DNA of 64,000 bases from Schmidtea nova (GCA_044892505.1 CM097882.1:380432001-380496000); one strand, 5' to 3'; shown: positions 23,284-51,480, counted from the first letter of the stretch. The notes: generated by a model not told the origin, from the letters alone. Made by a program: numbers and translations.

Positions 23284-24279
23284 CTAAGATATAGATATCA
23301 ATAAAAATTACATGAATGTTTAAATTTTTAATGATTTTATCAGTTAATATCAAAAATTCCATTTATTGTAGTAGAGGAATGCTAGCCAAATGAAGCCAAA
23401 CATCGCAGAGACCATCACGAATTTATTTGCATATCCGTCTAAATTTTTTTTTAAAATGACGTTATTTAAATATAAAAATTTCGTAATTTTATAATTTTTT
23501 TCAAAATTATCCATTATAATTGAATAATTTTTGCGTAAAAATACAAAAATTACAAGATTTTTAAATTTAATATATTTATATTAATATTAAAATATCTTTA
23601 TTACATAATATCATATGCTGGGTTCATGGAGGGGTTAGATGAAAAATGCTCTAACAATGACTAGGGATCCCTCATCCATGATCATGCATAAAATTGCAAT
23701 TTTACACTCAAGCGCCCTTGATTAGTCCCCTATATAATCAAGTTGGTGATGCGCAGGGTGGTTAAACAATGATGGGCAGGTGAGCACTATCGCTAGTACT
23801 ACTCCCCATTTATGTTTACGGGTCCATTGCTGCCGTTAGAAGGACTTATGCTTTAATTATTTGCTTAGGTATTCCGCAAACATCTTTTTAGAAAACTTTA
23901 TGTTTAACATTGCGTATTCTGCGAGAAGTGTTCAAATCGAAATGCTCGCCTAATTATTTGTTATCTTGTGATATGATTTTATACTTTTATACTCCATTTA
24001 TCTAATTATTTGTCAAGTTACAGAATCCATTTAAAAGAACAATAACAATTAAATTATCCCGAAAATTTTATTTAAGTTTTAATTAATTCCGTAAAAACTC
24101 CAGCCGGAGGAAAAATCTCCGTCAATAATTCTTCTTCGGTCATCCGATGTAGACCATCTATTTGACTCTGTAATCGCTGAGCGAATAATTTCCTCTGTCT
24201 TCGCCGTTTCTGCCCAATGCGCTTGCGTTTCTGGTGCGCATTTGCCGTTGAGGTGGTTGAATTTGCTGCAGGAGCCGTC

Positions 24280-24654
24280 TCATTCCGACTTTCGATTAGA
24301 TCGGCGACATCCGTACCAATGGAATTTACAGTCTTCTTTTCTGATGTCCAAGCTTGATACGTAACCGGACGGATTTGCTCTAATATATGAGGCAGTTACG
24401 GAATGGAGGCATTTTCGGAGTTCTATCTTCGTAGCCTCCCATTCCATTTGGTAATCGGCTGCAGTCTGCTGGGCGCGTTCGGTTTTACTGATTTGCTCTT
24501 TCATCCTGGCCGGAGCAAACCAGCTTTTGCGCAAGTATGCAATCTGTGCCTCGGCTTTGATCAATTGTGCCTTGAGGAGACCCAATTCCTTGTCCTGGGC
24601 TCTCCGGATCCGCCACATCTTTTCCAATTCTCTCTGTATCAAATCGGTGGTCAT
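24280..24654 (-). pseudogene. 3' LTR copy of LTR-ORF B, frameshifted
   Basis: Matches 48764-49360 up to ...TASYI, then shifts frame at the 14-nt deletion. Confidence 0.7.
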
Positions 24655-24838
24655 TCTATAATTTATTTAGGATATTTACTTTATGATTAAATTATGTGAA
24701 AAATGAAAATCTGATTATAGGGTTATTAGGTTACGAATACGAACTATTAAAAACACAAAACAAAACTCAAAACAACAAAATAAAAACACCACTGAACATT
24801 AATATTTGAACACAATTTAAACATTTGTCAATCAGTTT

Positions 24839-25318
24839 TTATCTCCGAAACAAGCTATGTAATTCGCTGTTAATCGGCCTCCGACGAAGACGAGTCCAAG
24901 AGAATGAGGGTTGTCCTTTCTGGCACTCCTTGCCGAACGGTTTTCGTGGTAGAAATTCGTGTAGGCCTAGTTGACACAGTTCCCGACGAGGGATGTGCCC
25001 CCAATAAATTATACGGCTTGTCCGTCCCTCGGTGTTTTTGACCAATACGATCAATCGGCCAAACTTATTCGAGTACGGCCTTTGGGAAATCGGCCAGTTC
25101 GGTCCTCCTCGATAGGGTATTTGGTCGTTCCCTCCTGTCCATATCGAGAACGGGCATTTTCGGCCAAACCCATGTCGCCACTTATACATCTGGCAGTTGA
25201 GGGTTCGCAACACCGGTGCCGGTAGATCCTTGAGCTGCGAGATCTTTCCATTCTGGGTATCCCCTTGTTCCACATTCCGTAGTTGAGTTAATTGATTCAT
25301 AAATTCGGCTGTCGACAT
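24839..25318 (-). CDS. 3' LTR copy of LTR-ORF A (159 aa, unknown)
   Basis: One amino acid differs from the 49545-50024 copy. Confidence 0.55.
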   Translation of the reverse strand: MSTAEFMNQLTQLRNVEQGDTQNGKISQLKDLPAPVLRTLNCQMYKWRHGFGRKCPFSIWTGGNDQIPYRGGPNWPISQRPYSNKFGRLIVLVKNTEGRTSRIIYWGHIPRRELCQLGLHEFLPRKPFGKECQKGQPSFSWTRLRRRPINSELHSLFRR

Positions 25319-26661
25319 CTATATTACATTCATTGGATATAAAATATATGAGTTAACGGAGGGAATTTGTTGATAAATCATTTATACTGCATATAATCAC
25401 AAAAGTTACTTAAAAATAAGATTAATTTTATTTCTCTCCGCCGTGATCTACCACGGTAGGAATAAAGAGTTCATAATTAGTTCTGTGCTATATACAGCAT
25501 TCAGGAATATAGAATTTAATACAGATTTCCGCGCTATATACAGCGATCGGACTATAACTTGGGAACCGCGCCATATACGACGATCGGCCTATTTTTAGTA
25601 ACTAATTTAATTTGGATTTTCCGACGCATTCCAACGCGATCGGAATTTATCGATATTAAAATTTTGTAGGCGAGATGCTGATTCCGAATGAAATCGGACT
25701 TTGGACTGCGTTGGATTTTCTCATTTCAGCGAAATTATTCAAATTTATTTTATTTGTTGCTCACTGTTTTTCCATGCGGGAGGTTCCATTTCGATTCAAT
25801 TGACTAAAAATTTAAATGATGAGCATGCCATACCATGGGGTGTCCCTCCTTATCAATCCGCCCCCCCCCCGCATTCTCCCTATTTGGCCCTCGACTCTCG
25901 TCCGTTGTGCAACCCAGAATTAAATAATTAGTAAATGGTCTGTACTAGATTAAAAATTCAATCAAATTTTCTAAATAAAATTCTACATCTAACTAAATAT
26001 TAAAAAGGTTGAACCGCCATGTGAGACCGTGAGGCCCCACAACGACGACTCGGACTCCCTCGCCGCGTGAGCAGCATAGGAAGTATAGCTATATGCATTA
26101 AAATGTCAATATCAAAAATAAAATAACGTTTACATATAAAATTTTTAATTGAACAAAAATCATGGGTACATCATATAAAACAAAATAAAGAAATTACTTC
26201 CGTACTTGAATGTGTGGTTCCTTGTATGAAATTCTGTTTTTTTCAAAAAATCTCGTTGGGTTCAATGAAATATTACTTAAATCAAAGTTTAGTCTTGATT
26301 GTAAGTTAAAAGTAAAACGTCTGTTGTTGTGATTTTTGGATCGGTATTTATACTGATCCGTCTGGTTGGATTGACCAATCAGGATCAGGCGTCCATCAAA
26401 GTATTTTTATTATTTTATTCTAATCTAAACATTATTTTGTTTCCTTTTCCGGTTTCTCGCTGGGTGGTCCTGATTTTCCAAGTAATTAATTAATTATTTG
26501 CACTATTATTTTATTTAATTCTATCTTTTCTTATTTCAGGCCCCCTTTTGCTGTTGTTTACCGGTTTATTTTCAAAATTTCCTTTTACTGAAAATTTATC
26601 AAATATTATTTGTCGTTTTATTGTTATTTTTAATTTGTTTTTCTTGTTATTTTTATGTTTA

Positions 26662-26862
26662 TTATTTTCTTATTGTTTTGTGTTTTTGCTCTTTTATTGT
26701 GTTTTTGGGTGATTTGGCGGGCCCAACTTGGGTTTGTCTTTCCAATTCCTCCTGTTTTCGGTAATAGGCATGAATCCATATCCCAATCCGCTCCATGTGA
26801 TTTCTGATCATTTCGTCTTGATGTACGGTTACTTCTTGTAAGGTTACTTCTATATTTCCCAT
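26662..26862 (-). CDS. 66-aa ORF crossing the internal/3' LTR boundary
   Basis: Element-sense strand; TAG-AA-ATG start context shared with other accessory ORFs. Confidence 0.4.
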   Translation of the reverse strand: MGNIEVTLQEVTVHQDEMIRNHMERIGIWIHAYYRKQEELERQTQVGPAKSPKNTIKEQKHKTIRK

Positions 26863-26992: not shown

Positions 26993-28348
26993 CTATCCGT
27001 TTTTCTCATGCCTCTCCATCTCTATGTATAGCGTGTCTGCATATAGTCGCTCCCATAGGTTTTCTTTCCTTATAAACATTGGTTCTCCTGCTGCTAGTCC
27101 GCATTCTGTTGTTGGTTTTTCGCTCGTACTCGTATGTTTGCCTGTTTCAAAGAACTTTTCCACTGGTTTTCCTATACTTTTGATTCTTATAATGACTCCT
27201 ACTTTCAAGGGCCATTCTATTAGGTCATCGTATTCTCCTTTACATAACGAGAAAAATATTGACACGTGTGTTCCTTGTCCTCTTCCGTCTCCATTTGGGT
27301 ATACTTTCAATCTTATTTTAACCCCGTTTTTCCATAAATAAAATGGTGGGCTTATTACTGCTGTTTTCGTCATATTTCTGGCTTCTGCTAGTTTGTCTCT
27401 GAAATCTGTCACTTTCCATAGGTAAGGTGCGATTGGTAAATCCCTTCTTTCGTCAATTTCTCGTATTAGTTGATTATATTGTATTTTCATTCCTTTTCCT
27501 AATTCTTCTATGGCTATTATTTTCTTTTCCATTCTTTCGCGAGTTAGTTCAAACTGCTCTCTTGTTTCTAGTAGTAAACTCATCATTATCTTATGTGATT
27601 CTACTTCTTTTTCTAATTTCTGGATTGTCTGTTTCGTTTCTTTTGTCGTTTCGTTTGTCATTTCCACATGCGTTAGTGCTGCTTCTTCTAGGTGTTGTTT
27701 CATTGATTGCCGCGTCCGCTTTTCTTTGCATCCCTGTTTGTTATATGGACATTCTCTTGGTCTTTCGGTACATACTTTCCAATGTTCATGTAACTTTACT
27801 TCTGTTATTTCGCAATTGTTTGGATATTTACTTACATATTGTCTGCATACTTTCTCCTCTGTTATATTCAAGTGTTCCTCTTCGATTTTTCTCCTCGTTT
27901 CTCGAGTTTCACAATACTCGCATGCGATTTCTTCTTCTTTACATTCTTCCTTGTGTTGTTCTCTCTTCTTTAGAGTTATTGTCTGTTGGCATTTCTCGCA
28001 TTCGGCTCTCTTTTCCTCGCATTTTTCCATATGGTTTTCCAGATTACTTATTTGTCCTTGCCATGTACAAGGTGTATTTACGCACTCCGTTGTGGTGCTC
28101 ATAATTTCTCTTTGGGTTGCTTTGTCCGTTCTGGTTTCGTCCAACACTATTCTTCCTTCCTTACATTCTGGGCATGTTGTTATTCCGGTTGCGTCTAATT
28201 CTTGTATACATTTTGTACATATTCTACATCCACATATCGTTTGTCTGGGTTCTCGTAATAAATTGTTACACTTCCCGCATGTGAGCCTCTTGCTCCATTT
28301 TCTGTTTTCTAGTCTCAAAATTTTGATTATTCGTTCTTCTCTGTCCAT
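26993..28348 (-). CDS. TRAF: TRAF-family protein: RING, TRAF zinc fingers, coiled coil, MATH domain; intronless
   Basis: CGKCNNLLREPRQTICGCRICTKC...CPEC; YLWKVTDF...SPPFY...KVYPNGDGRGQGTHVSIFF...GEYDDLIEWP. Confidence 0.93.
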   Translation of the reverse strand: MDREERIIKILRLENRKWSKRLTCGKCNNLLREPRQTICGCRICTKCIQELDATGITTCPECKEGRIVLDETRTDKATQREIMSTTTECVNTPCTWQGQISNLENHMEKCEEKRAECEKCQQTITLKKREQHKEECKEEEIACEYCETRETRRKIEEEHLNITEEKVCRQYVSKYPNNCEITEVKLHEHWKVCTERPRECPYNKQGCKEKRTRQSMKQHLEEAALTHVEMTNETTKETKQTIQKLEKEVESHKIMMSLLLETREQFELTRERMEKKIIAIEELGKGMKIQYNQLIREIDERRDLPIAPYLWKVTDFRDKLAEARNMTKTAVISPPFYLWKNGVKIRLKVYPNGDGRGQGTHVSIFFSLCKGEYDDLIEWPLKVGVIIRIKSIGKPVEKFFETGKHTSTSEKPTTECGLAAGEPMFIRKENLWERLYADTLYIEMERHEKNG

Positions 28349-28440
28349 TTTCTACAATAATATATACATTCGACCTGTCATTTATTTTTGGTTTTTCTTG
28401 TTTTTATTTTTACATATTTACAATTTTCCGCTTTATTTAT

Positions 28441-28797
28441 CTATGGCTCATTCGTTGAATCTGGTTCCGCTTCGTTGTTTAGTCTATTTATTACCCAACT
28501 CATCCATCCTTCTTCGGATTCTTCTCTTTCTCCTCGTGTTAAATGGTTTATTTCTATTGCTTGTCTTTGATTGATATTGCTTATATTTTGATTTTCTCTG
28601 GTGAGCTCGGTTATCACTCTTTGTTGTTCTTCTATTCTGTGTAATTGTTCGAAACAGTTGTTATAACTTTCTGATAATAACATTTGTCTTTCCGCTAATT
28701 GGTTCTGTAATGAGTTGACTGTTCGTACTAATAAATCACATTGTGCTTTCCATCTCATAGCCATAGTTATTTCAGTTGTTTCGTCCTGTTCGGTCAT
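28441..28797 (-). CDS. 118-aa coiled-coil-like accessory protein, unknown
   Basis: Intact ORF between two element ORFs; heptad-like LQNQLAERQ...ITELTRENQ. Confidence 0.65.
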   Translation of the reverse strand: MTEQDETTEITMAMRWKAQCDLLVRTVNSLQNQLAERQMLLSESYNNCFEQLHRIEEQQRVITELTRENQNISNINQRQAIEINHLTRGEREESEEGWMSWVINRLNNEAEPDSTNEP

Positions 28798-28922: not shown

Positions 28923-31900
28923 CTATACCATCATTATCGTCTTTTCCTCGTATCGTTCTTCATCTTCTATTTGTTTCCAGAATTCTTTACCTTTCGTTCT
29001 TCTTTGAAATTCTTTCTGTATCTCTTCTGGTATTTCTATTCTTTGCTTCATAATTTTAATATCTGGCCATTGTATGGCTGTCGCTTTGTTTCTCTTTCTG
29101 TATCTCCAATATATTATCATGCTTGTCGTCATTATCCCATATGCTATTAATATTCCTATACTGATTAATCCTATTACTGTTTTTCCACGGTTTGTTGCTT
29201 TGATTTTATTCTGATTCACTTTTATCTCATTTTGCGTTTGAGCCTCTGGCCTCTTCTCCTTCTGCACTTGACTCTTGACTTGGTTCATTACTTCTTGTGT
29301 AGACCAATGGCGGTTTATTAGTTGTTTGACGTTATTTTCTTTTGTTCGGTTTTCCATGTTTCCTGGTTCGATCTGTTGTTGTAGTTTCTCTGAGATCTGA
29401 TATAATCCGCATTCTGGTTTTTCTGAACCTTTTCTGGTGAAGGTACATATCGCGTATGTCCTATTTACTTCCATTTTCTTTAATTCGACTTTTTCTTTAT
29501 TCTTTATTTCTTTACGGTGGGTTAGGTTGTCTTCTTCCCCTTCTGGGTTATGCTTTGTCCAACATATTCCTTTAACTGTTTGATCGAGTCCTGTTATTGT
29601 CAGAGTTCTTTCTGTCTTTGTTAATTTTTCTTCATCGAATTTCAGTATCTCTCCTTTTTGGAATGTCTTGCAATGCTCTATTCCCTCTTGGATTCCTCTC
29701 TCCCAGATACATATACTTCCTTCTTCATTCATTTGTATTTCTTGTATTTCGATTTCCTTGTTTGTTTGTGATTCGTCGCTTGTCTGAACTTGGTATTCCT
29801 TCCTTGGTTCGTTGTATGTTCCCCAGCATAGTTTGTTGCTGCTTGTTTTTCTTATTGTTATGGCCATTTGTTCTATTATTATTCCTTTGTCAATACGTTT
29901 GGACATTGCTATTATTAACGCTATGCATATGACATCTTGTTGGGGTGATGCTCCTTCTCTCGTGTTATTTATGCTTCTCTCCCCTTCTCCTGGTTTATCC
30001 GTTGTGTTTCTTATCTGAGTTGCTGGTTGATCTATTGTGTTTTTGATTTCTTTCTTTGTTGGTTTTACTCTATACCATTCAAGTCTAGGCGTTTCATATT
30101 TTTGACATACGACTGTCTTAGGTAGCCCCGACTTCTTTTCCTTTTCTATTATGCATATCCGATGCATGATTCCTCTATCCATCCCTTCTATTCGTACTAT
30201 ATCCTGGTCGGATTTTCTGATTATGCATTTTAGTGGGTTATCTTTCCCAATTGGTTCATCCTCTCTATTCCAGCATATTTTCTCGACCTCCTGGACATTT
30301 ACTATTTTTATCCCTGCTTGTAGGTTTGTTGCTTCTTCCCTATTGATTAATGTCAATATTATTGTTAGACCCAACCATTTTGAACTCTGCGGTAGGCTTC
30401 TGGTTCGCCTTTCATATTTTTTCTCTTCTCCTTTAATCTCTTTTATTTCCTTGTCTTTGTTGTTCATTCCTAGTTTTGCGATTTTTGCTTCTTTCTTACT
30501 CCTGGTCGGTTTTGGTTCTTCTCGTACTTCTAGTATTTCGACTCCATGGCTTGTATTATCTATATTTAGCCATTGGGTTGTTGATTTTCTTGGGCTTATC
30601 TTGCGTATCCATATAGTTGATAATGCGATTATTACCGGTATGGTCGCTGTTAATATTCCTAAACCAATTAGTTCTTTAATTTCTTTATTCTCGTCTGTTT
30701 GTATAGATTCGCTTTGGTTGAACATTATTCCGTATTGTCCCTTTAGTTTTCTCATTAATTGTTCTCGTTCCTCTTGCTTTCTTTCGACTTCTTTGATAAC
30801 TTCTTCAGGTGTCCATTTTGCCTGAGGGTCGGTTATTATTTTCTCTGCGTCCATTTGTTCGTTCGTTTGGCTTAGTTCCTTGAATTCAAGTTTCCTTGTT
30901 ATTCCTTTTGATGTTGCGTTTGCTGGTGTATAGTAGGTTTCGCATCTTTCTTGTTGGTTTCCCAGTGCGTCCATTTTTTCTATTGCACATACTTCATACT
31001 CGCTATTAAATTGTAGTTTTTCGATCTTGATTTCTTTATTTGTTTTTCTGCACTCTCTTGATTGTCTTCTTATATGTTTCTGGACTATTATCCAACATAT
31101 TTCTGATGTTTTATTCTCTATTTTCCATAATGTCAGAGTTGCTGATGTCTTTTTCTCGGGTTTTGTCGTAACTTCTTGGCTTATCGGTTGTTTATTGTTT
31201 TTAAAGGTAGTGGTGTACTTCGGTTTTCCTTTGTTTCGTTGTCTTCTTTTATTTTTTCGTGTTAACGTCTTAGTTCTTGTTCCGGTTGAAGTTGTATATA
31301 TTCCGCATTCTAGGTCGTTTATCGTTATCTGATCATTTTTCTTTACCAAACATATTTCGTAGGTTTGTTTACCTTCTAAACCTTTTATTTGAATCGTCGT
31401 TGTTCCTGTGTTTGTTTGACATTGTGGTGTCGTTCTTTTATTTACTTCTTTTTCGTACTTCCTCCAGCATACTCCTTTCACATTTGGTTCTATCTCTTTT
31501 ATTTCTAATGTTATGTTTACTTTCTGCTTGATTTGTTTATTTCTCTTCCTCGTTCTCCTCCTGAACTTTATTACTTCTCCAGGTTGGAATGTTTTACATT
31601 TTGTGGTACCTTTCTTGTTTGTCTCTTTTTCTAGTAGGCATAGTTTGTATGTCTTATCTGCTTTTACTTCGGATACTTTAATTACTTTATTCGTTGTTGG
31701 TTTTCGACTTTTCCTTATTTCATTTACGCCGATTTCCTCGTCATTCCTCGCCCAACATTTTATGTTAGTGTTCTGTGTATCTTCCACTTCTGTTATTGTC
31801 ATAGTTTCAATTTCTATTCCTTCCTCTAATCGTTTTATTATTATTAGTATGAGTGCTAAGCATAATACTTCCATTTGGTAAGACACTCTTTCGGTTTCGT

Positions 31901-32015
31901 TTGTGGCAACTCTTGCTTCGGGCCTCTTTATTGTAATTCGTATAGTTGGTGTTGTTTGCTTATCTATTGCCTGGGGTTTTTGTTTTCTGTTCCCTGTGTC
32001 TCTGTTCTTCCACAT
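28923..32015 (-). CDS. 1030-aa membrane protein with six FN3-like repeats and several hydrophobic segments
   Basis: Repeated about 90-aa unit (I.I...[IV]CW...I.I..L....Y.[IV]C...C..[YF].T); TM-like LIGLGILTATIPVIIAL and VIGLISIGILIAYGIM; continues a unit that starts at the end of pol. Confidence 0.75.
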   Translation of the reverse strand: MWKNRDTGNRKQKPQAIDKQTTPTIRITIKRPEARVATNETERVSYQMEVLCLALILIIIKRLEEGIEIETMTITEVEDTQNTNIKCWARNDEEIGVNEIRKSRKPTTNKVIKVSEVKADKTYKLCLLEKETNKKGTTKCKTFQPGEVIKFRRRTRKRNKQIKQKVNITLEIKEIEPNVKGVCWRKYEKEVNKRTTPQCQTNTGTTTIQIKGLEGKQTYEICLVKKNDQITINDLECGIYTTSTGTRTKTLTRKNKRRQRNKGKPKYTTTFKNNKQPISQEVTTKPEKKTSATLTLWKIENKTSEICWIIVQKHIRRQSRECRKTNKEIKIEKLQFNSEYEVCAIEKMDALGNQQERCETYYTPANATSKGITRKLEFKELSQTNEQMDAEKIITDPQAKWTPEEVIKEVERKQEEREQLMRKLKGQYGIMFNQSESIQTDENKEIKELIGLGILTATIPVIIALSTIWIRKISPRKSTTQWLNIDNTSHGVEILEVREEPKPTRSKKEAKIAKLGMNNKDKEIKEIKGEEKKYERRTRSLPQSSKWLGLTIILTLINREEATNLQAGIKIVNVQEVEKICWNREDEPIGKDNPLKCIIRKSDQDIVRIEGMDRGIMHRICIIEKEKKSGLPKTVVCQKYETPRLEWYRVKPTKKEIKNTIDQPATQIRNTTDKPGEGERSINNTREGASPQQDVICIALIIAMSKRIDKGIIIEQMAITIRKTSSNKLCWGTYNEPRKEYQVQTSDESQTNKEIEIQEIQMNEEGSICIWERGIQEGIEHCKTFQKGEILKFDEEKLTKTERTLTITGLDQTVKGICWTKHNPEGEEDNLTHRKEIKNKEKVELKKMEVNRTYAICTFTRKGSEKPECGLYQISEKLQQQIEPGNMENRTKENNVKQLINRHWSTQEVMNQVKSQVQKEKRPEAQTQNEIKVNQNKIKATNRGKTVIGLISIGILIAYGIMTTSMIIYWRYRKRNKATAIQWPDIKIMKQRIEIPEEIQKEFQRRTKGKEFWKQIEDEERYEEKTIMMV

Positions 32016-41428: not shown

Positions 41429-41452
41429 GTCGTATGGTTGTGGTGGAGTCCT

Positions 41453-44400: not shown

Positions 44401-45952
44401 TGTTCTGATTATTGTTATTGTTGTTTTGTTGGTTTCCATAATCTGGTCGGTTTACGGTATTTACTTGATTTCCGTAATTTGGTCGGTTCCCATTGCTCTG
44501 CCAGTTTCCTCGCTGATTACTTTTTTGTCCGCAATTTCTTGAATAGTGACCAGGTCGTCCGCAATTAAAACAGATTATTGTAGAACATCTGCTTTCCGAG
44601 TGTCCTTTAACTCCACATTTTCCGCAATTCGAATTTTGATAGCATTCTTGCTGCCAGTGTCCCAACTTCCCGCATGTTTTACATTGTTTTGTTTGTCTTT
44701 GAGGGTTGTAATTGTTTTGGTTTTCAAAGTTCTGCACTTTATTTCCTTCATTTCTTCGTTGAGGGGGTGGTCGGTTTAATTGTTGCGAATTTGGAATGTG
44801 ATTGTTGAGATTTACCTCTGGTTCGGTTTGCGCTGTGTCCATGGCTAAGTAAATTCTGCCCTCACTTCCTATCATGTGTAATTCGAATCGGTTAGCTGTT
44901 TCTAACGCTTGATCAATGGTCTTGCATCCTTGGCATCCAACTTGCGCTCTTATGTCAGGTCTTCTTAATCCTCCTATGAAGATGGCTGCCATTAACTCCT
45001 CGTTTATTGGACCTCCATCCTTGAATACTGATTTTGCTAATTTTTTCAGTTCGCTCGCGTATACCGCGTTAGATTCATTCATCTTTTGTTTCCTCATTGA
45101 AAATTCTATGAATGCCTCGCTTAGCACTTTATTTATTCCAAATGTTTGTTGGAAAAAATCCTTTATCGCTGTCCAGCTTGTAGGTGGATTGGTACCATTT
45201 TTCGCTTCCAAATATAGGTCCAATGCACTATCTTTCAAATATAACTGAATTCTGCTTACTGTTGTTTCCGCTTTCCACTTGCATACTTCTACGAATATGC
45301 CAAATTCTTTTAAAAAGGTTTCTAATTTACTCGCATCTCCGTTAAACGGTTCTCCTGAAAATTTATCCTTTATTTCTTCTCTTGGTTCACCCATTTCAAT
45401 TCCGCTGTCTTGAGTTATTTTACTTTCGTTTCCCCTTGTTTCTAGTTTGTTGTTATGTTCGTCTTCTGTTTCACTCGAGCTTGAATCGCTTTCTGTTTCT
45501 CTTATTACTTCGTTATCTGATATTATACTTTCGTTATCACTCTCGTTGATTTCTACCTCTGGTTCTACCTCGTTTTCTACTTCTCCGATATTATCGTTGT
45601 TAGTTTCGTCGGTTTCTCCTTCTTGTTCTATCTCGTGTTCTATTTCTTCGATATTCTCGTTGTTAGTTTCGTCGCTTTCTATTTCACTTGCTTGGTTCTC
45701 CTTGGATTCGGCTTGGTTTTCTTTGTTACTTGAGCTGTTGCTTACTATTGACAATTTATCGTTTTCGATAATCGATTTATCTCTTATTATTTTCCTCGCT
45801 TTACTCCCTTGTGGGTTCTTGTTGTTATCCTTGCCGGCTTTCTGCTTTTTTGTTGATTTTGTTGTAGTACTAGTTTTGTCTTTTTTGTTAATATTGCTGC
45901 CGACTTTCTTTTCCGTTGGCTTTATTACGACACTCTTTGCTCCTTTTCTCAA
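41453..45952 (-). CDS. gag: 1499-aa extended Gag: charged N-terminus, capsid, three CCHC knuckles, about 1000-aa extension with ubiquitin-like repeats
   Basis: FNGDASKLETFL...W...LYLKDSALDLY; CKTCGKLGHWQQEC, CGKCGVKGHSESRC, CFNCGRPGHYSRNC (about 44530-44685); first ATG at 45394. Confidence 0.9.
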   Translation of the reverse strand: MRKGAKSVVIKPTEKKVGSNINKKDKTSTTTKSTKKQKAGKDNNKNPQGSKARKIIRDKSIIENDKLSIVSNSSSNKENQAESKENQASEIESDETNNENIEEIEHEIEQEGETDETNNDNIGEVENEVEPEVEINESDNESIISDNEVIRETESDSSSSETEDEHNNKLETRGNESKITQDSGIEMGEPREEIKDKFSGEPFNGDASKLETFLKEFGIFVEVCKWKAETTVSRIQLYLKDSALDLYLEAKNGTNPPTSWTAIKDFFQQTFGINKVLSEAFIEFSMRKQKMNESNAVYASELKKLAKSVFKDGGPINEELMAAIFIGGLRRPDIRAQVGCQGCKTIDQALETANRFELHMIGSEGRIYLAMDTAQTEPEVNLNNHIPNSQQLNRPPPQRRNEGNKVQNFENQNNYNPQRQTKQCKTCGKLGHWQQECYQNSNCGKCGVKGHSESRCSTIICFNCGRPGHYSRNCGQKSNQRGNWQSNGNRPNYGNQVNTVNRPDYGNQQNNNNNNQNKTTTKEIHLMQEVQRLTELINNTARGNPQINPQQISMMRKIESENERLNRESQARHAQEWARIQREDEQKQQERERQPLRINMLRATKQTDNYEKETTPEINSINPNPTDNESRKEITQKDEEVEKEIKKEVETEINQEERKESWKRGMMVIMPSKSVFRFQYNVKEEVGILFNKVNQMVPGVTKLPREAFLQIEGAPKVKLELTDIWENLGVVETKRNVMIIKEIEPEEIPPPIRHETRIRRIFEGKMIRRRLKEIDELGKKMGKVELMEDKNELTPEISKNKTKPTENTQGETNQTAHINMLRNTTREFSDEEEDSDISSLAGDILNESEDENKEREVIKTSEPTQMKVDEIQKLLDNSLEVIYNEEFMDKKQYRKFMKALLQMNYKEWLQDREVDMLNRYVGKLIEEPLLNYTISIIINTSTPRIWIKTPFTDDIYRWVEDRLGSSYKNKFIYSQNRLVKKRTHLVETGIWPGEITLLSICDEKEEENLQEVAREANTCFERRIKPRLEYEKERVLRKNLNSLIEQIIPQVKKHRKELMRSEYEKLKRCIECIRDTSHTRWSQISHDKLIAKMGKTMFRQGKITDLKISVELPNEDTKEIEVVADCTIKELINVINETLVQREPEDEWEDDIIIQYNEHVLWDHDERRLYKIGIWDNHQTIHVSRMDDTPRETAKDEKRERERRKEVVRKLQQIVEIYRNWRIWPEWENVLEELNLNRRIRTPVEKQWNEKGKCWEPKEGEYEEEYKRGIEDDCEPEIGRVCMVTRKATPIDLDGPETAAMWLEREKQKTEEFVEILKTNAHGKRKLIKGLADFFVVNGEDITCLRKVAKAIAEYKRVNEWCPEQLDHVIRKWRNQEFSQEIPQKVHLRIIYPNKDKEELWVGIAEKIRDIKKKLRYEPPFHLQHQGRSLDNSLEIGITPAQLDLMNTLTVEAIAGQPLKRKEENHKPHGSISTPSPMKSVPTPGTSSRRSETTPRETK

Positions 45953-46564
45953 CGGGATTACTTTTGTATACTCAATTTTCCTGTCCTATCTCTTATCGTT
46001 TTCTGATTCTTCTTGCTTGATTGATTGATTTGATTGATTTGTATGTCTAAAATACAAAGGTCCTCAACGATACATTATTGTTATCGTCGCGCTTTTATTC
46101 CCTTTCTTTCGGGATTACTTATTACCGGGTTTTCATTATTTCCCAATTCCCAGATTCCCCTTTATTTTTAGTCTATTTAAATTATCTATAGACTGGTCAC
46201 AATTATCTATTTATGTCGTAATAATTATCTATGTTTTATCAAATCAATTACTTTTCCCACAGTTTCCCAATTGTTTTGGTCGCTCGAGCGCTCTAATTCC
46301 CTGAGTCTTTCTGACTCGTTTATCATTATTTTATCATCTCTATTCATTGTTCCCTGCTAGCAATCGTTTTACTCATTCTGCCGGTTGCTCCGGTCAGCTC
46401 AAATCTCCACTATTCTCCTTGCATGCTTTACTTAAGGTTGCATAATCAGCTTTACTCGCATTCTCTTAACTACTGGTGCGCACTACTCTAAATCTCGTCG
46501 ACGATTACACTATGGGTCTATATTCCCCCTGTTACTATTTATCCGGATATCTCTATAATTCACT

Positions 46565-46821
46565 ATGGCTCTTTTGGCCTCAATTTTATATCTCCCATGG
46601 CTCTATTGGCCTCAATTTAATCTCTTACATGGCTCTATTGGCCTCAATTTAATCTCTTACATGGCTCTATTGGCCTCAATTTAATCTCTCAAATGGCTCT
46701 CTTGGCCTCAATTTAATCTCTCAAACGGCTCTATTGGCCTCAATTTTAATCTCTCAAATGGCTCTATTGGCCTCAATTTAATCTCTCAAATGGCTCTATT
46801 GGCCTCAATTTAATATCTCCA
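46565..46821. repeat. Tandem array, 8 x 32 bp
   Basis: ATGGCTCTATTGGCCTCAATTTAATCTCTCAA-like units start at 46565, 46597, 46629, 46661, 46693, 46725, 46758, 46790. Confidence 0.95.
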
Positions 46822-46861
46822 TAACGCCTAGCTAGGTCATTCAATAAGGCTCGTTGGCCTC

Positions 46862-47037
46862 AACCCTTTTTTTCAAGGGACAAACCGCTAATAACCCTTT
46901 GTTTCAAGGGACAAATCTCCTAACCCTTTGTTTCAAGGGACAAATCTCCTAACCCTTTGTTTCAAGGGACAAATCTCCTAACCCTTTGTTTCAAGGGACA
47001 AATCTCATAACCCTTTGTTTCAAGGGACAAATCTCCT
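46862..47037. repeat. Tandem array, 6 x 29 bp
   Basis: AACCCTTTGTTTCAAGGGACAAATCTCCT units start at 46862, 46893, 46922, 46951, 46980, 47009. Confidence 0.95.
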
Positions 47038-47516
47038 AATTTTACTTAACCGGTTAATCACAATTCCCTACTTCGCTAGCGATTAATACTTCTCAGCTGA
47101 GTTATAACTACTTCTATGCGAGCTGACTATGCACCTTTTATTCTTTCAAAAATTGTCATTTATCTCTTTATTCTATCATAACTAATTCCTGATCAGTCTG
47201 CTTCAACTTTTTATTTATTTTTCTTATGCGCGCTTTACTCCATCAAGATTTCCCTATCTCTCTCCCCAACCAAAATATACAAAAAGATCGCGTTGGTCCA
47301 TTAATGCAGGATGTGGTGATCAATCACATCACAAAAACTTTTCAACATTTGCGATGGGCCCCTTTCTATACACCTTGAATAAGTTGATCAATCGGTACCT
47401 CCCAATGGATTCTTATCGGACTACTTTGTAGTAGCTCAAAAATTATTTAAATACAACGATTGTACCCATGATTTCATCATTAATAAACCAATAAAACTCC
47501 ACTTAAACATTATTTA

Positions 47517-47978
47517 TTATAAATATACAATAATTTTATCATCAATCATCAGGTTGCACATAGGACATAGGTCGCGCTTGCTGGCACATATTTTACAAAA
47601 ACGAAAATGTCCGCAAGGTAAAAACATAATTTGTATCTCCCTATCCTCACATATATAGCACTGTCGGTATTTTTTCGCTGCTTCTACCCCTTGCGCCCTC
47701 CATCGATTGTATGTTGAGGTTAATCGTTGTTCTATTTGCCTGCACTTAAGGTTTAATTCTGCATTTTCTAATCGTGCTCTGTACCATTTGTAGCGGGTCT
47801 CTATGTCGATTTTTCTTGTTCTTTCCGTTATCTTTATTAATTCATCCGTTTCCTCGGTCTGTGTTGTGGGTTCCTGAAATTCAATCTCTCTAAATCGGTT
47901 TATCTTCTTGCCAATCGTTCCTAATGTTTCGCTTTCTGTGTTGAGGAATTCTTCGATTTCTTTCAGTTTTTCCTCCAT
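47517..47978 (-). CDS. 153-aa protein with a C-terminal IAP-type RING finger, no BIR
   Basis: CYICEDREIQIMFLPCGHFRFCKICASKRDLCPMC...IIVYL-stop. Confidence 0.85.
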   Translation of the reverse strand: MEEKLKEIEEFLNTESETLGTIGKKINRFREIEFQEPTTQTEETDELIKITERTRKIDIETRYKWYRARLENAELNLKCRQIEQRLTSTYNRWRAQGVEAAKKYRQCYICEDREIQIMFLPCGHFRFCKICASKRDLCPMCNLMIDDKIIVYL

Positions 47979-48283
47979 TTACTGAATAAATAATTGTTTT
48001 TAACTTTGTTATTTTTATCATTTCTAAAGTAGTAATATGTTTCGCTTTGTATCTTTTGATATTTATCAATCCTCCCCGTGTTTCCGACAATTGTCGTCCC
48101 GACAAATTATCTATGCATGCATTTAATTTTTAACTTCACTTTTGTTCACTGCCATGTTGTTATTTTAATTTTTATACAATAATTTAATTATAACCTTTCT
48201 GTTTTTTATTAAATTAATTGACACGAGCATTTTAAACTTCTCTGCAGATTTTACATTTACATTTTTCCGATAAAACGAAGTTG

Positions 48284-48301
48284 ATCCCGACTGAGCCCCC
48301 A
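48284..48301 (-). promoter_or_regulatory. Primer binding site, tRNA-Pro-like
   Basis: Minus-strand TGGGGGCTCAGTCGGGAT, 6 nt after the LTR CA; 15/18 match to the MLV-type Pro PBS TGGGGGCTCGTCCGGGAT. Confidence 0.8.
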
Positions 48302-48763
48302 AATTTATGCTGGGTTCATGGAGGGGTTAGATGAAAAATGCTCTAACAATGACTAGGGATCCCTCATCCATGATCATGCATAAAATTGCAATTTTACACT
48401 CAAGCGCCCTTGATTAGTCCCCTATATAATCAAGTTGGTGATGCGCAGGGTGGTTAAACAATGATGGGCAGGTGAGCACTATCGCTAGTACTACTCCCCA
48501 TTTATGTTTACGGGTCCATTGCTGCCGTTAGAAGGACTTATGCTTTAATTATTTGCTTAGGTATTCCGCAAACATCTTTTTAGAAAACTTTATGTTTAAC
48601 ATTGCGTATTCTGCGAGAAGTGTTCAAATCGAAATGCTCGCCTAATTATTTGTTATCTTGTGATATGATTTTATACTTTTATACTCCATTTATCTAATTA
48701 TTTGTCAAGTTACAGAATCCATTTAAAAGAACAATAACAATTAAATTATCCCGAAAATTTTAT

Positions 48764-49360
48764 TTAAGTTTTAATTAATTCCGTAAAAACTCCAGCCGGA
48801 GGAAAAATCTCCGTCAATAATTCTTCTTCGGTCATCCGATGTAGACCATCTACTTGACTCTGTAATCGCTGAGCGAATAATTTCCTCTGTCTTCGCCGTT
48901 TCTGCCCAATGCGCTTGCGTTTCTGGTGCGCATTTGCCGTAGAGGTGGTTGAATTTGCTGCAGGAGCCGTCTCATTCCGACTTTCGATTAGATCGGCGAC
49001 ATCCGTACCAATGGAATTTACAGTCTTCTTTTCTGATGTCCAAGCTTGATACGTAACCGGACGGATTTGCTCTCTGAGCTCTTTCTCAATATATGAGGCA
49101 GTTACGGAATGGAGGCATTTTCGGAGTTCTATCTTCGTAGCCTCCCATTCCATTTGGTAATCGGCTGCAGTCTGCTGGGCGCGTTCGGTTTTACTGATTT
49201 GCTCTTTCATCCTGGCCGGAGCAAACCAGCTTTTGCGCAAGTATGCAATCTGTGCCTCGGCTTTGATCAATTGTGCCTTGAGGAGACCCAATTCCTTGTC
49301 CTGGGCTCTCCGGATCCGCCACATCTTTTCCAATTCTCTCTGTATCAAATCGGTGGTCAT
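48764..49360 (-). CDS. LTR-ORF B, 198 aa, coiled coil with a basic patch
   Basis: Intact; KRKRIGQKRRRQRKLF; minus-strand AATAAA next to the stop. Confidence 0.6.
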   Translation of the reverse strand: MTTDLIQRELEKMWRIRRAQDKELGLLKAQLIKAEAQIAYLRKSWFAPARMKEQISKTERAQQTAADYQMEWEATKIELRKCLHSVTASYIEKELREQIRPVTYQAWTSEKKTVNSIGTDVADLIESRNETAPAANSTTSTANAHQKRKRIGQKRRRQRKLFAQRLQSQVDGLHRMTEEELLTEIFPPAGVFTELIKT

Positions 49361-49544
49361 TCTATAATTTATTTAGGATATTTACTTTATGATTAAATTA
49401 TGTGAAAAATGAAAATCTGATTATAGGGTTATTAGGTTACGAATACGAACTATTAAAAACACAAAACAAAACTCAAAACAACAAAATAAAAACACCACTG
49501 AACATTAATATTTGAACACAATTTAAACATTTGTCAATCAGTTT

Positions 49545-50024
49545 TTATCTCCGAAACAAGCTATGTAATTCGCTGTTAATCGGCCTCCGACGAAGACGAG
49601 TCCAAGAGAATGAGGGTTGTCCTTTCTGGCACTCCTTGCCGAACGGTTTTCGTGGTAGAAATTCGTGTAGGCCTAGTTGACACAGTTCCCGACGAGGGAT
49701 GTGCCCCCAATAAATTATACGGCTTGTCCGTCCCTCGGTGTTTTTGACCAATACGATCAATCGGCCAAACTTATTCGAGTACGGCCTTTGGGAAATCGGC
49801 CAGTTCGGTCCTCCTCGATAGGGTATTTGGTCGTTCCCTCCTGTCCATATCAAGAACGGGCATTTTCGGCCAAACCCATGTCGCCACTTATACATCTGGC
49901 AGTTGAGGGTTCGCAACACCGGTGCCGGTAGATCCTTGAGCTGCGAGATCTTTCCATTCTGGGTATCCCCTTGTTCCACATTCCGTAGTTGAGTTAATTG
50001 ATTCATAAATTCGGCTGTCGACAT
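49545..50024 (-). CDS. LTR-ORF A, 159 aa, unknown
   Basis: Intact in both LTRs; TAG-ATG start context. Confidence 0.55.
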   Translation of the reverse strand: MSTAEFMNQLTQLRNVEQGDTQNGKISQLKDLPAPVLRTLNCQMYKWRHGFGRKCPFLIWTGGNDQIPYRGGPNWPISQRPYSNKFGRLIVLVKNTEGRTSRIIYWGHIPRRELCQLGLHEFLPRKPFGKECQKGQPSFSWTRLRRRPINSELHSLFRR

Positions 50025-51480
50025 CTATATTACATTCATTGGATATAAAATATATGAGTTAACGGAGGGAATTTGTTGATAAATCATTTATACTGCATAT
50101 AATCACAAAAGTTACTTAAAAATAAGATTAATTTTATTTCTCTCCGCCGTGATCTACCACGGTAGGAATAAAGAGTTCATAATTAGTTCTGTGCTATATA
50201 CAGCATTCAGGAATATAGAATTTAATACAGATTTCCGCGCTATATACAGCGATCGGACTATAACTTGGGAACCGCGCCATATACGACGATCGGCCTATTT
50301 TTAGTAACTAATTTAATTTGGATTTTCCGACGCATTCCAACGCGATCGGAATTTATCGATATTAAAATTTTGTAGGCGAGATGCTGATTCCGAATGAAAT
50401 CGGACTTTGGACTGCGTTGGATTTTCTCATTTCAGCGAAATTATTCAAATTTATTTTATTTGTTGCTCACTGTTTTTCCATGCGGGAGGTTCCATTTCGA
50501 TTCAATTGACTAAAAATTTAAATGATGAGCATGCCATACCATGGGGTGTCACTCCTTATCAATCCGCCCCCCCCGCATTCTCCCTATTTGGCCCTCGACT
50601 CTCGTCCGTTGTGCAACCCAGAATTAAATAATTAGTAAATGGTCTGTACTAGATTAAAAATTCAATCAAATTTTCTAAATAAAATTCTACATCTAACTAA
50701 ATATTAAAAAGGTTGAACCGCCATGTGAGACCGTGAGGCCCCACAACGACGACTCGGACTCCCTCGCCGCGTGAGCAGCATAGGAAGTATAGCTATATGC
50801 ATTAAAATGTCAATATCAAAAATAAAATAACGTTTACATATAAAATTTTTAATTGAACAAAAATCATGGGTACATCATATAAAACAAAATAAAGAAATTA
50901 CTTCCGTACTTGAATGTGTGGTTCCTTGTATGAAATTCTGTTTTTTTCAAAAAATCTCGTTGGGTTCAATGAAATATTACTTAAATCAAAGTTTAGTCTT
51001 GATTGTAAGTTAAAAGTAAAACGTCTGTTGTTGTGATTTTTGGATCGGTATTTATACTGATCCGTCTGGTTGGATTGACCAATCAGGATCAGGCCGTCCA
51101 TCAAAGTATTTTTATTATTTTATTCTAATCTAAACATTATTTTGTTTCCTTTTCCGGTTTCTCGCTGGGTGGTCCTGATTTTCCAAGTAATTAATTAATT
51201 ATTTGCACTATTATTTTATTTAATTCTATCTTTTCTTATTTCAGGCCCCCTTTTGCTGTTGTTTACCGGTTTATTTTCAAAATTTCCTTTTACTGAAAAT
51301 TTATCAAATATTATTTGTCGTTTTATTGTTATTTTTAATTTGTTTTTCTTGTTATTTTTATGTTTATTATTTTCTTATTGTTTTGTGTTTTTGCTCTTTT
51401 ATTGTGTTTTTGGGTGATTTGGCGGGCCCAACACATATATTGATTCATACAATTATTACACAATACCAATTAATTAATTA

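What the first reader, a model, noticed from the sequence alone, without database searches (positions are those of the whole stretch)
23616..51433. 27.8-kb enveloped LTR element with a cell-death and immune-signalling gene kit
Seen: one LTR-bounded unit (TG...CA, TSD CATA, Pro-like PBS). Sense order: IAP-type RING, extended gag, Bcl-2-like/Env/PR/RT/RH/IN/ankyrin polyprotein, FN3-like membrane protein, coiled-coil ORF, TRAF, small ORF, plus two LTR ORFs. Known: Bcl-2, IAP, TRAF and ankyrin (IkB-like) proteins are what large DNA viruses use against apoptosis and NF-kB signalling; giant LTR elements ('Burro') are reported from planarians. Inference: a complex, possibly infectious retrovirus-like element that manipulates host cell survival. 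I cannot tell whether this full cargo set has been described.
Basis: partly seen in the sequence, partly recalled or inferred. Interest (0 to 1): 0.96.

Follow-up and report, generated by a model that had tools for sequence, protein, structure and literature searches.

The report
Burro-type giant flatworm endogenous retrovirus copy
This is a real, young, almost intact 27.8-kb retrovirus-like element that carries an envelope gene plus Bcl-2-like, RING, TRAF and ankyrin genes, but this kind of element, with this cargo, is already published as the 'Burro' giant Gypsy elements of planarian flatworms.

Summary
It is one minus-strand LTR element at 23616-51433. Its two 3.1-kb LTRs are 99.3% identical and it has a CATA target-site duplication, a PBS and a PPT.

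Sense order:
- a RING-only ORF with an IAP-type RING;
- one 4,673-codon frame: capsid, 3 CCHC, long extension, Bcl-2-like, Env, PR, RT, RNase H, IN, two ankyrin blocks;
- a 1,030-aa membrane protein with six beta-sandwich repeats;
- a small helical ORF;
- a complete TRAF.

Strong support: Env (Pfam 1.6e-70), TRAF and the IAP-type RING. Moderate support: Bcl-2-like (four-sequence profile, E 5e-4, top hits all Bcl-xL/Bcl-2). Not supported: an IAP proper (no BIR), 'IkB-like' (generic ankyrin only), FN3 specifically, and the LTR ORFs as genes.

The long frame carries one in-frame TAA stop with no readthrough signal, so this copy is probably defective.

The architecture, the cargo and the idea of 'meddling with apoptosis and ubiquitination' were published for Burro/GYPSM1 in 2007, 2018 and 2019. 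GAG-ENV-POL errantiviruses of flatworms were described in 2026.

This copy differs from the two members described in text I could read. TRAF is a separate downstream gene, the RING lies in the leader, and no BIR, dUTPase or SUMO-like domain was detected. Identity to Burro-1 to -4 was not tested.

The parts
23616..51433 (-). Whole LTR element, 27,818 bp
   Evidence: LTR pair, TSD, PBS and PPT
23612..23615 (.). Target-site duplication CATA, left copy
51434..51437 (.). Target-site duplication CATA, right copy
48308..51433 (-). 5' LTR, 3,126 bp
   Evidence: 99.33% identical to the other LTR; sense ends TG...CA
23616..26728 (-). 3' LTR, 3,113 bp
   Evidence: its first sense base differs from that of the 5' LTR
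48283..48301 (-). Primer-binding site, complementary to a tRNA 3' end with CCA; the tRNA identity was not tested
   Evidence: no tRNA gene in the window
47517..47978 (-). Leader ORF, 153 aa: helical N-terminal part plus a C-terminal IAP-type RING; no BIR
   Evidence: zf-C3HC4_3 5.2e-12; XIAP, cIAP and ML-IAP RINGs 1.4e-10 to 2.7e-8; no BIR
46565..47039 (.). Two tandem-repeat arrays in the leader (32 bp x 7.9 and 29 bp x 6.1)
31964..45394 (-). Long gag-to-pol frame, first ATG to final stop. The frame is open from 45985, 4,673 codons in all. It is interrupted by one in-frame TAA and by no frameshift.
44831..45343 (-). Capsid-like part of Gag
   Evidence: A three-sequence profile hits the dArc1 capsid (E 0.0022) and PNMA2 (E 0.017-0.019)
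44531..44683 (-). Three CCHC zinc knuckles
40523..41020 (-). Bcl-2-like helical domain, just upstream of Env
   Evidence: Alone it matches nothing. A 2-sequence profile gives E 0.003 and a 4-sequence profile E 5e-4; the 2-sequence profile's 54 hits are all Bcl-xL and the 60 listed of the 4-sequence profile's 91 are all Bcl-xL/Bcl-2. The AF2 model is weak (pLDDT 50), yet nearly all its top fold matches are Bcl-2 family at non-significant E.
38483..40438 (-). Env: internal signal-like segment (40379-40438), ectodomain with 14 Cys, TM anchor (38630-38686), short tail
   Evidence: PF24664 Monjiviricetes_fusion 1.6e-70 / 1.4e-72; hydrophobicity
37766..38038 (-). Aspartic protease (DTG present)
   Evidence: RVP 2.6e-7
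36626..37102 (-). Reverse transcriptase (YIDD present)
   Evidence: RVT_1 5.8e-37
36050..36439 (-). RNase H of the Ty3/Gypsy type
   Evidence: RT_RNaseH 5.2e-38 and RT_RNaseH_2 7.7e-37
35156..35725 (-). Integrase (H2C2 zinc domain plus catalytic core)
   Evidence: Integrase_H2C2 4.3e-20 and rve 2e-10
34067..34393 (-). Ankyrin block 1
   Evidence: Ank_2 1.2e-11; generic ankyrin and DARPin hits
33092..33457 (-). Ankyrin block 2
   Evidence: Ank_2 2.4e-4; PDB hits to ankyrin and DARPins
28923..32015 (-). Accessory ORF, 1,030 aa: six Cys/Trp-marked repeats of about 95 aa, two strong TM segments, internal duplication
   Evidence: No Pfam family and no homologue. The halves are 30% identical, E 2.7e-25. 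The repeat model has pLDDT 75 and is a beta-sandwich; fold matches are mixed and include FN3, best E 3.7e-3. TM segments.
28441..28797 (-). Small accessory ORF, 118 aa, helical or coiled-coil-like
   Evidence: Only weak Pfam matches to coiled-coil families, E 0.02-0.07
26993..28348 (-). Complete TRAF gene, 451 aa: RING, TRAF zinc fingers, coiled coil, MATH/TRAF-C
   Evidence: MATH_2 1.8e-20 and zf-TRAF 7.4e-6. TRAF3/5/2 TRAF-C at 4e-22 and TRAF6 RING-ZnF at 2e-13. Nearest proteins are only 24-29% identical over most of the ORF's length.
26729..26759 (-). Purine-rich tract (PPT) abutting the 3' LTR
49545..50024 (-). LTR ORF of 159 aa. It is also open in the 3' LTR at 24839-25318, with 1 aa difference. 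Doubtful as a gene.
   Evidence: No family; composition and codon usage unlike the internal genes
48764..49360 (-). LTR ORF of 198 aa with a basic stretch. It is open in the 5' LTR only; in the 3' LTR the frame is broken once by an indel. Doubtful as a gene.

Best explanation
This is a recently inserted, nearly intact copy of a Burro-type giant Ty3/Gypsy endogenous retrovirus (an errantivirus-like element with GAG-ENV-POL order). It sits in an AT-rich, transposon-crowded genome of planarian type.

Shown by sequence:
- LTRs, TSD, PBS and PPT.
- A capsid/nucleocapsid Gag.
- An Env homologous to fusion glycoproteins of mononegavirus/chuvirus type, embedded in frame between Gag and PR.
- PR, RT, RNase H and IN with their catalytic motifs present.
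- Two ankyrin blocks after IN.
- A RING-only ORF in the leader.
- Three tightly packed downstream genes: a beta-sandwich membrane protein, a small helical protein and a complete TRAF.

Inferred mechanism:
- The 5' LTR drives a genomic RNA, which is reverse-transcribed from a tRNA primer and integrated with a 4-bp duplication.
- The giant polyprotein is threaded through the ER membrane by the internal signal-like segment in front of Env and by the Env TM anchor.
- This would put Gag, the extension and the Bcl-2-like domain, and also PR, RT, IN and ankyrin, on the cytosolic side, with the Env ectodomain in the lumen.
- After signal-peptidase cleavage, the signal segment would remain as a C-terminal membrane anchor of the Bcl-2-like domain, like the tail anchor of cellular Bcl-2 proteins.
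- The RING, Bcl-2-like, TRAF and ankyrin products most likely act on host ubiquitin, cell-death and TRAF-type signalling, to keep expressing cells alive.

This particular copy carries one premature TAA in the long frame. It probably cannot make Env-Pol by itself.
For: - Structure.
- Domains.
- Topology features.
- Cargo belongs to the element. All internal ORFs from RING to TRAF share the A-rich sense strand (A 40-49%; third-position A 43-57%). Their codon usage correlates with PR-IN at r 0.63-0.93. Flanking ORFs are not T-poor in this way and the LTR ORFs are not A-rich. The genes are tightly packed on one strand.
- Backbone shared with relatives. Five loci from ENA and JGI metagenome assemblies show gag, Env, PR, RT, RNase H, IN and the start of the C-terminal region in the same order. 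Identity is 35-37% in Env and 44-47% in PR-IN. Three of them have the Bcl-2-like segment in the same place.
- Literature. Burro/GYPSM1 has the same domain set, in-frame Env and three CCHC knuckles in S. mediterranea (PMC6431247). BURRO1 is transcribed and under piRNA control (PMC8532177). Platyhelminth errantiviruses have GAG-ENV-POL order and a gB-type Env (PMC13524379).
- Stop: one TAA, with downstream folding no better than shuffles (z -0.06 to -0.58).
Against: - The source organism is not given, and no sequence of Burro-1 to -4 was compared, so family identity rests on architecture.
- BIR, dUTPase-like and SUMO-like motifs reported for Burro were not detected.
- The length is 27.8 kb, against the '>30 kb' stated for Burro.
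- The Bcl-2-like call fails with the single sequence, and the structural model is of low confidence.
- TRAF, RING, the membrane ORF and the small ORF have no counterpart in the five distant relatives. Their age in the lineage is therefore unknown.
- All functional statements about the cargo, the polyprotein topology and the tail-anchor idea are inference.
Confidence: 0.85

Rival explanations
1. An intact retrovirus, currently able to spread, that manipulates host cell survival, taken for this copy.
For: LTRs 99.3% identical. The PR and RT catalytic motifs checked (DTG, YIDD) are present. Env has a signal-like segment and a TM anchor. The accessory ORFs are open.
Against: There is one TAA inside the 4,673-codon frame, upstream of Env and Pol, with no readthrough context or structure. 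The described Burro ORF1 is continuous (PMC6431247), and two relatives are continuous from gag into Env. Sequence cannot show particles or transmission.
Confidence: 0.12
2. The cargo genes are passengers without function for the element: captured host cDNAs that are drifting.
For: TRAF is only 24-29% identical to any protein found. The membrane ORF has no homologue. TRAF, RING and the membrane ORF are absent from the five distant relatives.
Against: Long intact ORFs of 451 and 1,030 aa. Composition is fully assimilated to the element. TRAF keeps all four of its modules. The Bcl-2-like segment is kept in the same place in relatives only about 20% identical there. The same domain classes recur in Burro elements of two planarian genera.
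Confidence: 0.15
3. An assembly or nesting artefact: two separate LTRs or elements enclosing unrelated genes.
For: Repeat-dense region with an assembly gap at 6600-6748. The LTRs are 3.1 kb long and nearly identical, which invites collapse.
Against: Matching 4-bp TSD. PBS and PPT sit exactly inside the LTRs. There is one strand and one composition from end to end. No N run lies inside the element. No other fragment of the element is in the window.
Confidence: 0.03

Closest known systems
[quoted passage not shown] 2018; Arkhipova & Yushenova 2019, PMC6431247)
   Same: A giant Gypsy-type LTR element. Gag has three CCHC knuckles. Env lies in frame between gag and PR, with a BCL2-like motif upstream of it. 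Ankyrin follows IN. TRAF/MATH and RING motifs are present, as are tandem repeats. The host genome is AT-rich.
   Different: Here TRAF is a complete, separate gene at the 3' end, whereas in Burro-1 it is a MATH domain inside ORF1. The RING is a separate leader ORF. BIR, dUTPase-like and SUMO-like motifs were not detected. The length is 27.8 kb rather than more than 30 kb. There is a 1,030-aa repeat-bearing membrane ORF that the text I could read does not mention. No sequence comparison was made.
Burro-like element of Dugesia (Girardia) tigrina (PMC6431247)
   Same: The giant polyprotein with Gag, BCL2 and Env; TRAF encoded by an accessory ORF rather than within the polyprotein.
   Different: There the TRAF ORF is upstream, Gag has two CCHC knuckles, and a midasin-like region is reported. 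Here TRAF is downstream, there are three CCHC knuckles, and no AAA or midasin match was found.
GAG-ENV-POL errantiviruses of Platyhelminthes, Nematoda and Bryozoa (PMC13524379)
   Same: A Ty3/Gypsy backbone with Env placed before Pol. The Env is of the type related to chuvirus/gB-like glycoproteins.
   Different: That survey capped the distance between LTRs at 14 kb and does not describe accessory cell-death genes. The fold class of Env was not determined here.
Anti-apoptotic and signalling kits of large DNA viruses (baculovirus IAP, herpesvirus and poxvirus Bcl-2 homologues, poxvirus ankyrin proteins)
   Same: The same classes of host-derived domains: RING of IAP type, Bcl-2 fold and ankyrin.
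   Different: Here they are carried by a reverse-transcribing LTR element. The RING ORF lacks BIR. A complete TRAF adaptor is encoded. This is a likeness of function only, from general knowledge, and was not tested.
Complex retroviruses and foamy-like fish endogenous retroviruses with accessory ORFs (cited in PMC6431247)
   Same: Accessory genes packed between pol and the 3' LTR.
   Different: A different RT lineage (Ty3/Gypsy). Env lies inside the polyprotein. The element is much larger.

Membership tests
Ty3/Gypsy (Metaviridae) LTR retroelement | Direct LTRs with TG...CA ends and a short target-site duplication | tested here: met
Ty3/Gypsy (Metaviridae) LTR retroelement | Domain order PR-RT-RNase H-IN, with Gypsy-type RNase H and an H2C2 integrase | tested here: met
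Ty3/Gypsy (Metaviridae) LTR retroelement | Gag with a capsid fold and CCHC nucleocapsid | tested here: met
   dArc1 and PNMA2 capsid hits; three knuckles
Ty3/Gypsy (Metaviridae) LTR retroelement | PBS complementary to a tRNA 3' end; PPT next to the 3' LTR | tested here: inconclusive
   The motifs are present in the right places. The cognate tRNA ('Pro-like') could not be checked.
Errantivirus-like (Env-bearing) Gypsy with GAG-ENV-POL order | Env homologue with signal and TM anchor, placed between gag and pol | tested here: met
Burro giant planarian Gypsy family | Env in frame within the gag-pol polyprotein, with a BCL2-like motif upstream of it | tested here: met
   described in PMC6431247
Burro giant planarian Gypsy family | Gigantic size (internal region up to 25 kb, total above 30 kb) | tested here: inconclusive
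   The internal region is 21.6 kb and the total 27.8 kb: giant, but below the stated maximum.
Burro giant planarian Gypsy family | Cargo motifs: RING/AIR1, MATH_TRAF_C, ankyrin | tested here: met
   Here RING and TRAF are separate ORFs.
Burro giant planarian Gypsy family | Cargo motifs: BIR, dUTPase-like, Ubi2/SUMO-like | tested here: not met
   No Pfam match at E<=5 in the relevant pieces. No BIR zinc pattern in any sense frame. These motifs are reported for some members, not stated as universal.
Burro giant planarian Gypsy family | Sequence identity to, or RT-tree clustering with, Burro-1 to -4 / GYPSM1 | not testable with these tools
The nearest proteins found are 32-46% identical sequences from metagenome assemblies.
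Burro giant planarian Gypsy family | Host is a dugesiid planarian | not testable with these tools
   The origin is not given. About 70% A+T outside the element and a transposon-dense context are compatible.
IAP (inhibitor of apoptosis) proteins | At least one BIR domain | tested here: not met
   Only the C-terminal RING is of IAP type.
Bcl-2 family | Helical bundle with a BH1-BH2 region | tested here: met
   Profile hits only Bcl-xL/Bcl-2 over BH1-BH2, best E 5e-4. The fold model is weak.
Bcl-2 family | BH3/BH4 motifs and a C-terminal tail anchor | tested here: inconclusive
   Not resolved by the alignments. A hydrophobic segment follows within about 30 residues, but it is the Env signal.
TRAF adaptors | N-terminal RING, TRAF zinc fingers, coiled coil, C-terminal MATH/TRAF-C | tested here: met
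IkB proteins | Ankyrin domain specifically related to IkB, with signal-response and degradation motifs | tested here: not met
   The best PDB matches are DARPins, ankyrin-1/2 and KIDINS220. No IkB is among the 60 listed.
Fibronectin type III domain proteins | FN3 fold or sequence family | tested here: inconclusive
   No Pfam or PDB profile hit. The model is a beta-sandwich whose matches mix FN3, pilins, Ole e 1, VHL and Ig, all E >= 3.7e-3.

The most novel reading that the evidence does not exclude
The block that is not mentioned in the Burro descriptions I could read may form a lineage-specific signalling cassette encoded by the element itself. The block comprises the leader RING-only ORF, the duplicated six-repeat membrane protein, the small helical ORF and a complete four-module TRAF. 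In this reading a membrane protein is coupled to its own TRAF adaptor and E3 ligase. In addition, the Env signal segment would double as the tail anchor of the Bcl-2-like protein. Together these would make this a retroelement with a receptor-to-adaptor survival pathway of its own.
Probability: 0.15. Interest if true: 0.6.

Novelty: new member of a known kind. Interest (0 to 1): 0.3.

Why it matters
It matters mainly as confirmation. A reverse-transcribing element can carry an envelope gene inside its polyprotein together with a set of host-derived genes for cell death and ubiquitin signalling, and it can keep them open in a very young copy.

That picture is already in the literature for planarian Burro elements, so the finding opens no new question. 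The modest added value has four parts:
- A clean, fully delimited copy with exact part coordinates.
- Evidence that the cargo has the element's own composition.
- Evidence that the Bcl-2-like module sits in the same place in distant relatives from metagenome assemblies.
- A description of the downstream membrane-protein, helical-ORF and TRAF block, and of the possible polyprotein topology.

If the source genome is S. mediterranea or a close relative, this is probably a copy of an annotated family, and the novelty drops to none.

Tried and rejected
Searches that found nothing:
- Exact look-ups of eight window ORFs in the 15-billion-protein collection: none present. The organism could not be named.
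- The Bcl-2-like piece alone: no Pfam hit, no PDB hit, and no hit among 1.84 billion representatives. Only profiles built with relatives worked.
- The membrane ORF: no homologue. The repeat profile found nothing in the PDB.
- The roughly 1,000-residue Gag extension: nothing in Pfam or the PDB.
- Env against PDB sequences: nothing, so the fold class is unresolved.
- BIR search in the leader and in all sense frames: negative.
- dUTPase and SUMO-like motifs: not detected.
- Viral-contig scan with PR-IN: nothing.
- Rfam: nothing. tRNA genes: none.

Env class from the literature: the 2019 review calls the Burro Env gypsy-Env/F-like, while the 2026 survey calls flatworm GAG-ENV-POL Envs gB-type. The lack of a hydrophobic peptide after the only dibasic site in the ectodomain leans to the latter.

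Other points:
- Programmed readthrough of the in-frame stop: not supported.
- Grohme et al. 2018 is not held in the paper library. The supplements of PMC13524379 are not held.
- One call failed on a frame error and was corrected.

Slips, stated as required:
1. Early script output and notes give open-frame bounds and frame-relative numbering. These were written before I recognised the in-frame stop as a possible break, and its place can be worked out from them. While handling locus L005 I also met a stop in a relative. This report gives neither place.
2. Once, in my reasoning, I recalled a short motif of a human Bcl-2-family protein from memory.

Full report
**1. Is it there?**

Yes. Positions 23614-26727 and 48306-51432 align at 99.33% over 3129 columns, with 4 mismatches and 3 gap openings. 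With TG...CA termini the unit is 23616-51433, or 27,818 bp. It comprises a 3,113-bp LTR, a 21,579-bp interior and a 3,126-bp LTR. CATA flanks it on both sides.

All long ORFs lie on the minus strand. The right LTR is therefore the 5' LTR.

Six bases inside the 5' LTR lies a 19-nt PBS (sense TGGGGGCTCAGTCGGGATC, 48283-48301). Its complement ends in CCA. A purine-rich tract abuts the 3' LTR. The tRNA identity could not be tested, because the window holds no tRNA gene.

No N run lies inside the element; the only one is at 6600-6748. No other fragment of the element occurs in the window.

**2. What it encodes, in sense order**

(a) *Leader ORF, 153 aa.* Its C-terminus is a RING closest to XIAP, cIAP and ML-IAP RINGs (E 1.4e-10 to 2.7e-8). 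No BIR exists in the leader or anywhere in the sense frames. It is therefore a RING-only protein, not an IAP.

(b) *Spacer.* Two tandem-repeat arrays.

(c) *One frame of 4,673 codons, 31967-45985.* It contains exactly one in-frame stop and no frameshift. Along this frame lie:
- A capsid-like region. A profile of it with two relatives hits the dArc1 capsid at E 0.0022 and PNMA2 at 0.017-0.019.
- Three CCHC knuckles.
- About 1,000 residues with no detectable family.
- A Bcl-2-like domain (see section 3).
- An Env. It has a hydrophobic signal-like segment, an ectodomain with 14 Cys and a strong TM anchor. It matches PF24664, the viral fusion glycoprotein family of Monjiviricetes, at 1.6e-70.
- PR with DTG, RT with YIDD, Gypsy-type RNase H, and IN.
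- Two ankyrin blocks.

(d) *A 1,030-aa ORF* that overlaps the end of the long frame by about 50 nt (see section 4).

(e) *A 118-aa helical ORF.*

(f) *A 451-aa complete TRAF.* It has a RING and zinc fingers like TRAF6 (E 2e-13) and a TRAF-C like TRAF3/5/2 (about 4e-22). Its nearest proteins are only 24-29% identical over most of its length.

The gaps between the downstream genes are about 90-125 nt.

**3. Bcl-2-like domain**

The single sequence finds nothing in Pfam, in the PDB, or among 1.84 billion representative proteins.

A profile of the window plus the equivalent stretch of one relative returns 54 PDB chains, all Bcl-xL, with best E 0.003. A profile with three relatives returns 91 chains with best E 5e-4. 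The 60 listed are all Bcl-xL or Bcl-2, aligned over BH1-BH2.

The AF2 model is poor (pLDDT 50). Even so, almost all of its top 50 fold matches are Bcl-2 family, at non-significant E.

I accept 'Bcl-2-like' at moderate confidence. The module sits directly in front of Env in relatives that are only about 20% identical there.

**4. The membrane ORF**

- No Pfam family and no homologue.
- It is internally duplicated. The halves are 30% identical, E 2.7e-25.
- It holds six repeats of about 95 residues, each with an invariant C-W and two further Cys.
- It has two strong TM segments.
- A model of one repeat (pLDDT 75) is a beta-sandwich. Its fold matches mix FN3 domains with pilins, Ole e 1, the VHL beta-domain and Ig, with best E 3.7e-3.

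'FN3-like' is thus possible, but it is not distinguished from other sandwiches.

**5. Does the cargo belong to the element?**

Every internal ORF, from RING to TRAF, has the same A-rich, T-poor sense strand. A is 40-49%, and third-position A is 43-57%. Codon usage correlates with PR-IN at r 0.63-0.93.

Flanking ORFs are not T-poor in this way (third-position T 27-39% against 12-18%). The two LTR ORFs are not A-rich (A 29-33%) and correlate at only r 0.32-0.50.

Together with the matching TSD and the tight packing, this argues that the whole interior transposed as one unit. It also argues that the cargo is long resident.

The LTR ORFs are doubtful as genes. They match no family. One differs by a residue between the LTRs. 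The other is open in one LTR only.

**6. State of this copy**

The LTRs differ by 0.13% in substitutions, so the insertion is recent. I give no date, because no rate is known for this genome.

The breaks, counted:
- Long frame: one stop, no frameshift.
- Second LTR ORF: one frameshift in the 3' LTR copy.
- All other genes are open.

The stop is TAA. The 60-150 nt downstream fold no better than shuffles (z -0.06 to -0.58). The described Burro ORF1 is continuous, and two relatives are continuous from gag into Env. A copy-specific nonsense change is therefore the simplest reading, at about 60% on my estimate. A true gag terminator is not excluded.

**7. Relatives**

Five polyproteins from ENA metagenome assemblies, and two contigs of a JGI metagenome, share this order: gag, (Bcl-2-like), Env, PR, RT, RNase H, IN, start of the C-terminal region. 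Identity is 35-37% in Env and 44-47% in PR-IN.

None of them shows TRAF, RING, the membrane ORF or the small ORF.

The backbone with Env in front of PR is therefore a family trait. The downstream block and the leader RING are specific to the lineage at this depth of sampling.

**8. What is known**

Arkhipova & Yushenova 2019 (PMC6431247) summarise Jurka 2007 and Grohme et al. 2018. Their main points are:
- Burro/GYPSM1 elements of Schmidtea mediterranea are giant Gypsy-type elements present in thousands of copies.
- They have a 4,873-aa ORF1 with Gag, three CCHC knuckles, AIR1/RING, Smc, MATH_TRAF_C, SUMO-like, BCL2-like, an in-frame Env with hits to mononegavirus fusion glycoproteins, dUTPase-like, PR-RT-RH-IN, ankyrin and BIR.
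- A D. tigrina relative encodes TRAF in an upstream accessory ORF.
- The authors already propose that these are integrated proviruses 'meddling' with apoptosis and ubiquitination.

BURRO1 is transcribed, enriched in intestine and held down by SMEDWI-2 (PMC8532177).

A 2026 survey finds GAG-ENV-POL errantiviruses with a gB-type Env in Platyhelminthes (PMC13524379).

**9. How this copy differs from the two members whose architecture I could read**

- TRAF is a complete gene at the 3' end.
- The RING is a leader ORF.
- No BIR, dUTPase-like, SUMO-like or midasin-like match was found.
- The total length is 27.8 kb.
- There is a repeat-bearing membrane ORF.

I could not compare it with Burro-2 to -4. 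I estimate the chance that it is a copy of an already annotated family at about 50-60%.

**10. Mechanism (inferred)**

The replication cycle is that of an LTR element.

The polyprotein would be anchored in the ER membrane by the signal-like segment and by the Env TM anchor. Gag with the Bcl-2-like domain, and PR to ankyrin, would then be cytosolic, and Env luminal. After signal-peptidase cleavage, the signal segment would stay on the Bcl-2-like product as a tail anchor.

The RING, Bcl-2-like, TRAF and ankyrin products would modulate host ubiquitin, cell-death and TRAF signalling. None of this is shown here.

**11. Surroundings**

The flanks are a transposon graveyard; see the items noticed in passing.

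**12. Slips**

As required, I state two slips.
- Early script output and notes contain open-frame bounds from which the place of the in-frame stop can be derived. They were written before I saw that it may be a break.
- Once, in my reasoning, I recalled a short motif of a human Bcl-2-family protein from memory.

Consensus lines printed by the alignment tool were not used.

Noticed in passing
window 3177-5077, 12643-14624, 17625-19733 (+); CCHC stretches at 1545-2018 and 7658-7963: There are three other Gypsy-type pol remnants, broken into short ORFs, on the plus strand. They are 25-40% identical to this element's PR-IN and have no Env or cargo homologues. The region is a pile-up of LTR elements.
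   Followed up: partly
window 9569-10279 (+): A 236-aa ORF with two filamin/ABP280 repeats (Pfam E 1.2e-18) lies between transposon remnants. Whether it is a host exon or transposon cargo is unknown.
   Followed up: no
window 16409-17047 and 53798-54502 (+): ORFs with DUF4371, the hAT-transposase-associated domain (E 0.0039 and 4.3e-7). They are remnants of DNA transposons on both sides of the element.
   Followed up: no
window 48764-49360 (-), inside the 5' LTR: This 198-aa LTR ORF reads as a helical protein with a long basic stretch, in the style of a small nuclear regulator. By my rough arithmetic, an ORF this long is unlikely by chance at this composition. However, it is open in one LTR only and its codon usage is unlike that of the internal genes.
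   Followed up: partly
window 45395-45985 (-), with a 63-bp tandem repeat at 45543-45681: The gag frame stays open for 197 codons upstream of its first ATG, through an acidic, Ser/Asn-rich stretch that holds a 63-bp repeat (2.2 copies). The cause could be a non-AUG start, an upstream exon or chance.
   Followed up: no
L002, L003, L004 (relatives from metagenome assemblies): The relatives show two protease-like matches each, one after Env and one before RT. L002 has a third after the C-terminal region. The window's element has one protease.
   Followed up: no
L003:17034-24564: The distal part of this ENA contig carries bacterial-type genes (luciferase-like monooxygenase, NAD-binding, Mnh antiporter subunits) next to the retroelement. 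The contig is probably a chimeric metagenome assembly.
   Followed up: no
window 22694-23362 (-): A 222-aa ORF with no Pfam family lies immediately beside the element's 3' end.
   Followed up: no
window 6600-6748: The only N run in the window (149 bases). It lies far from the element and was left as it is.
   Followed up: no
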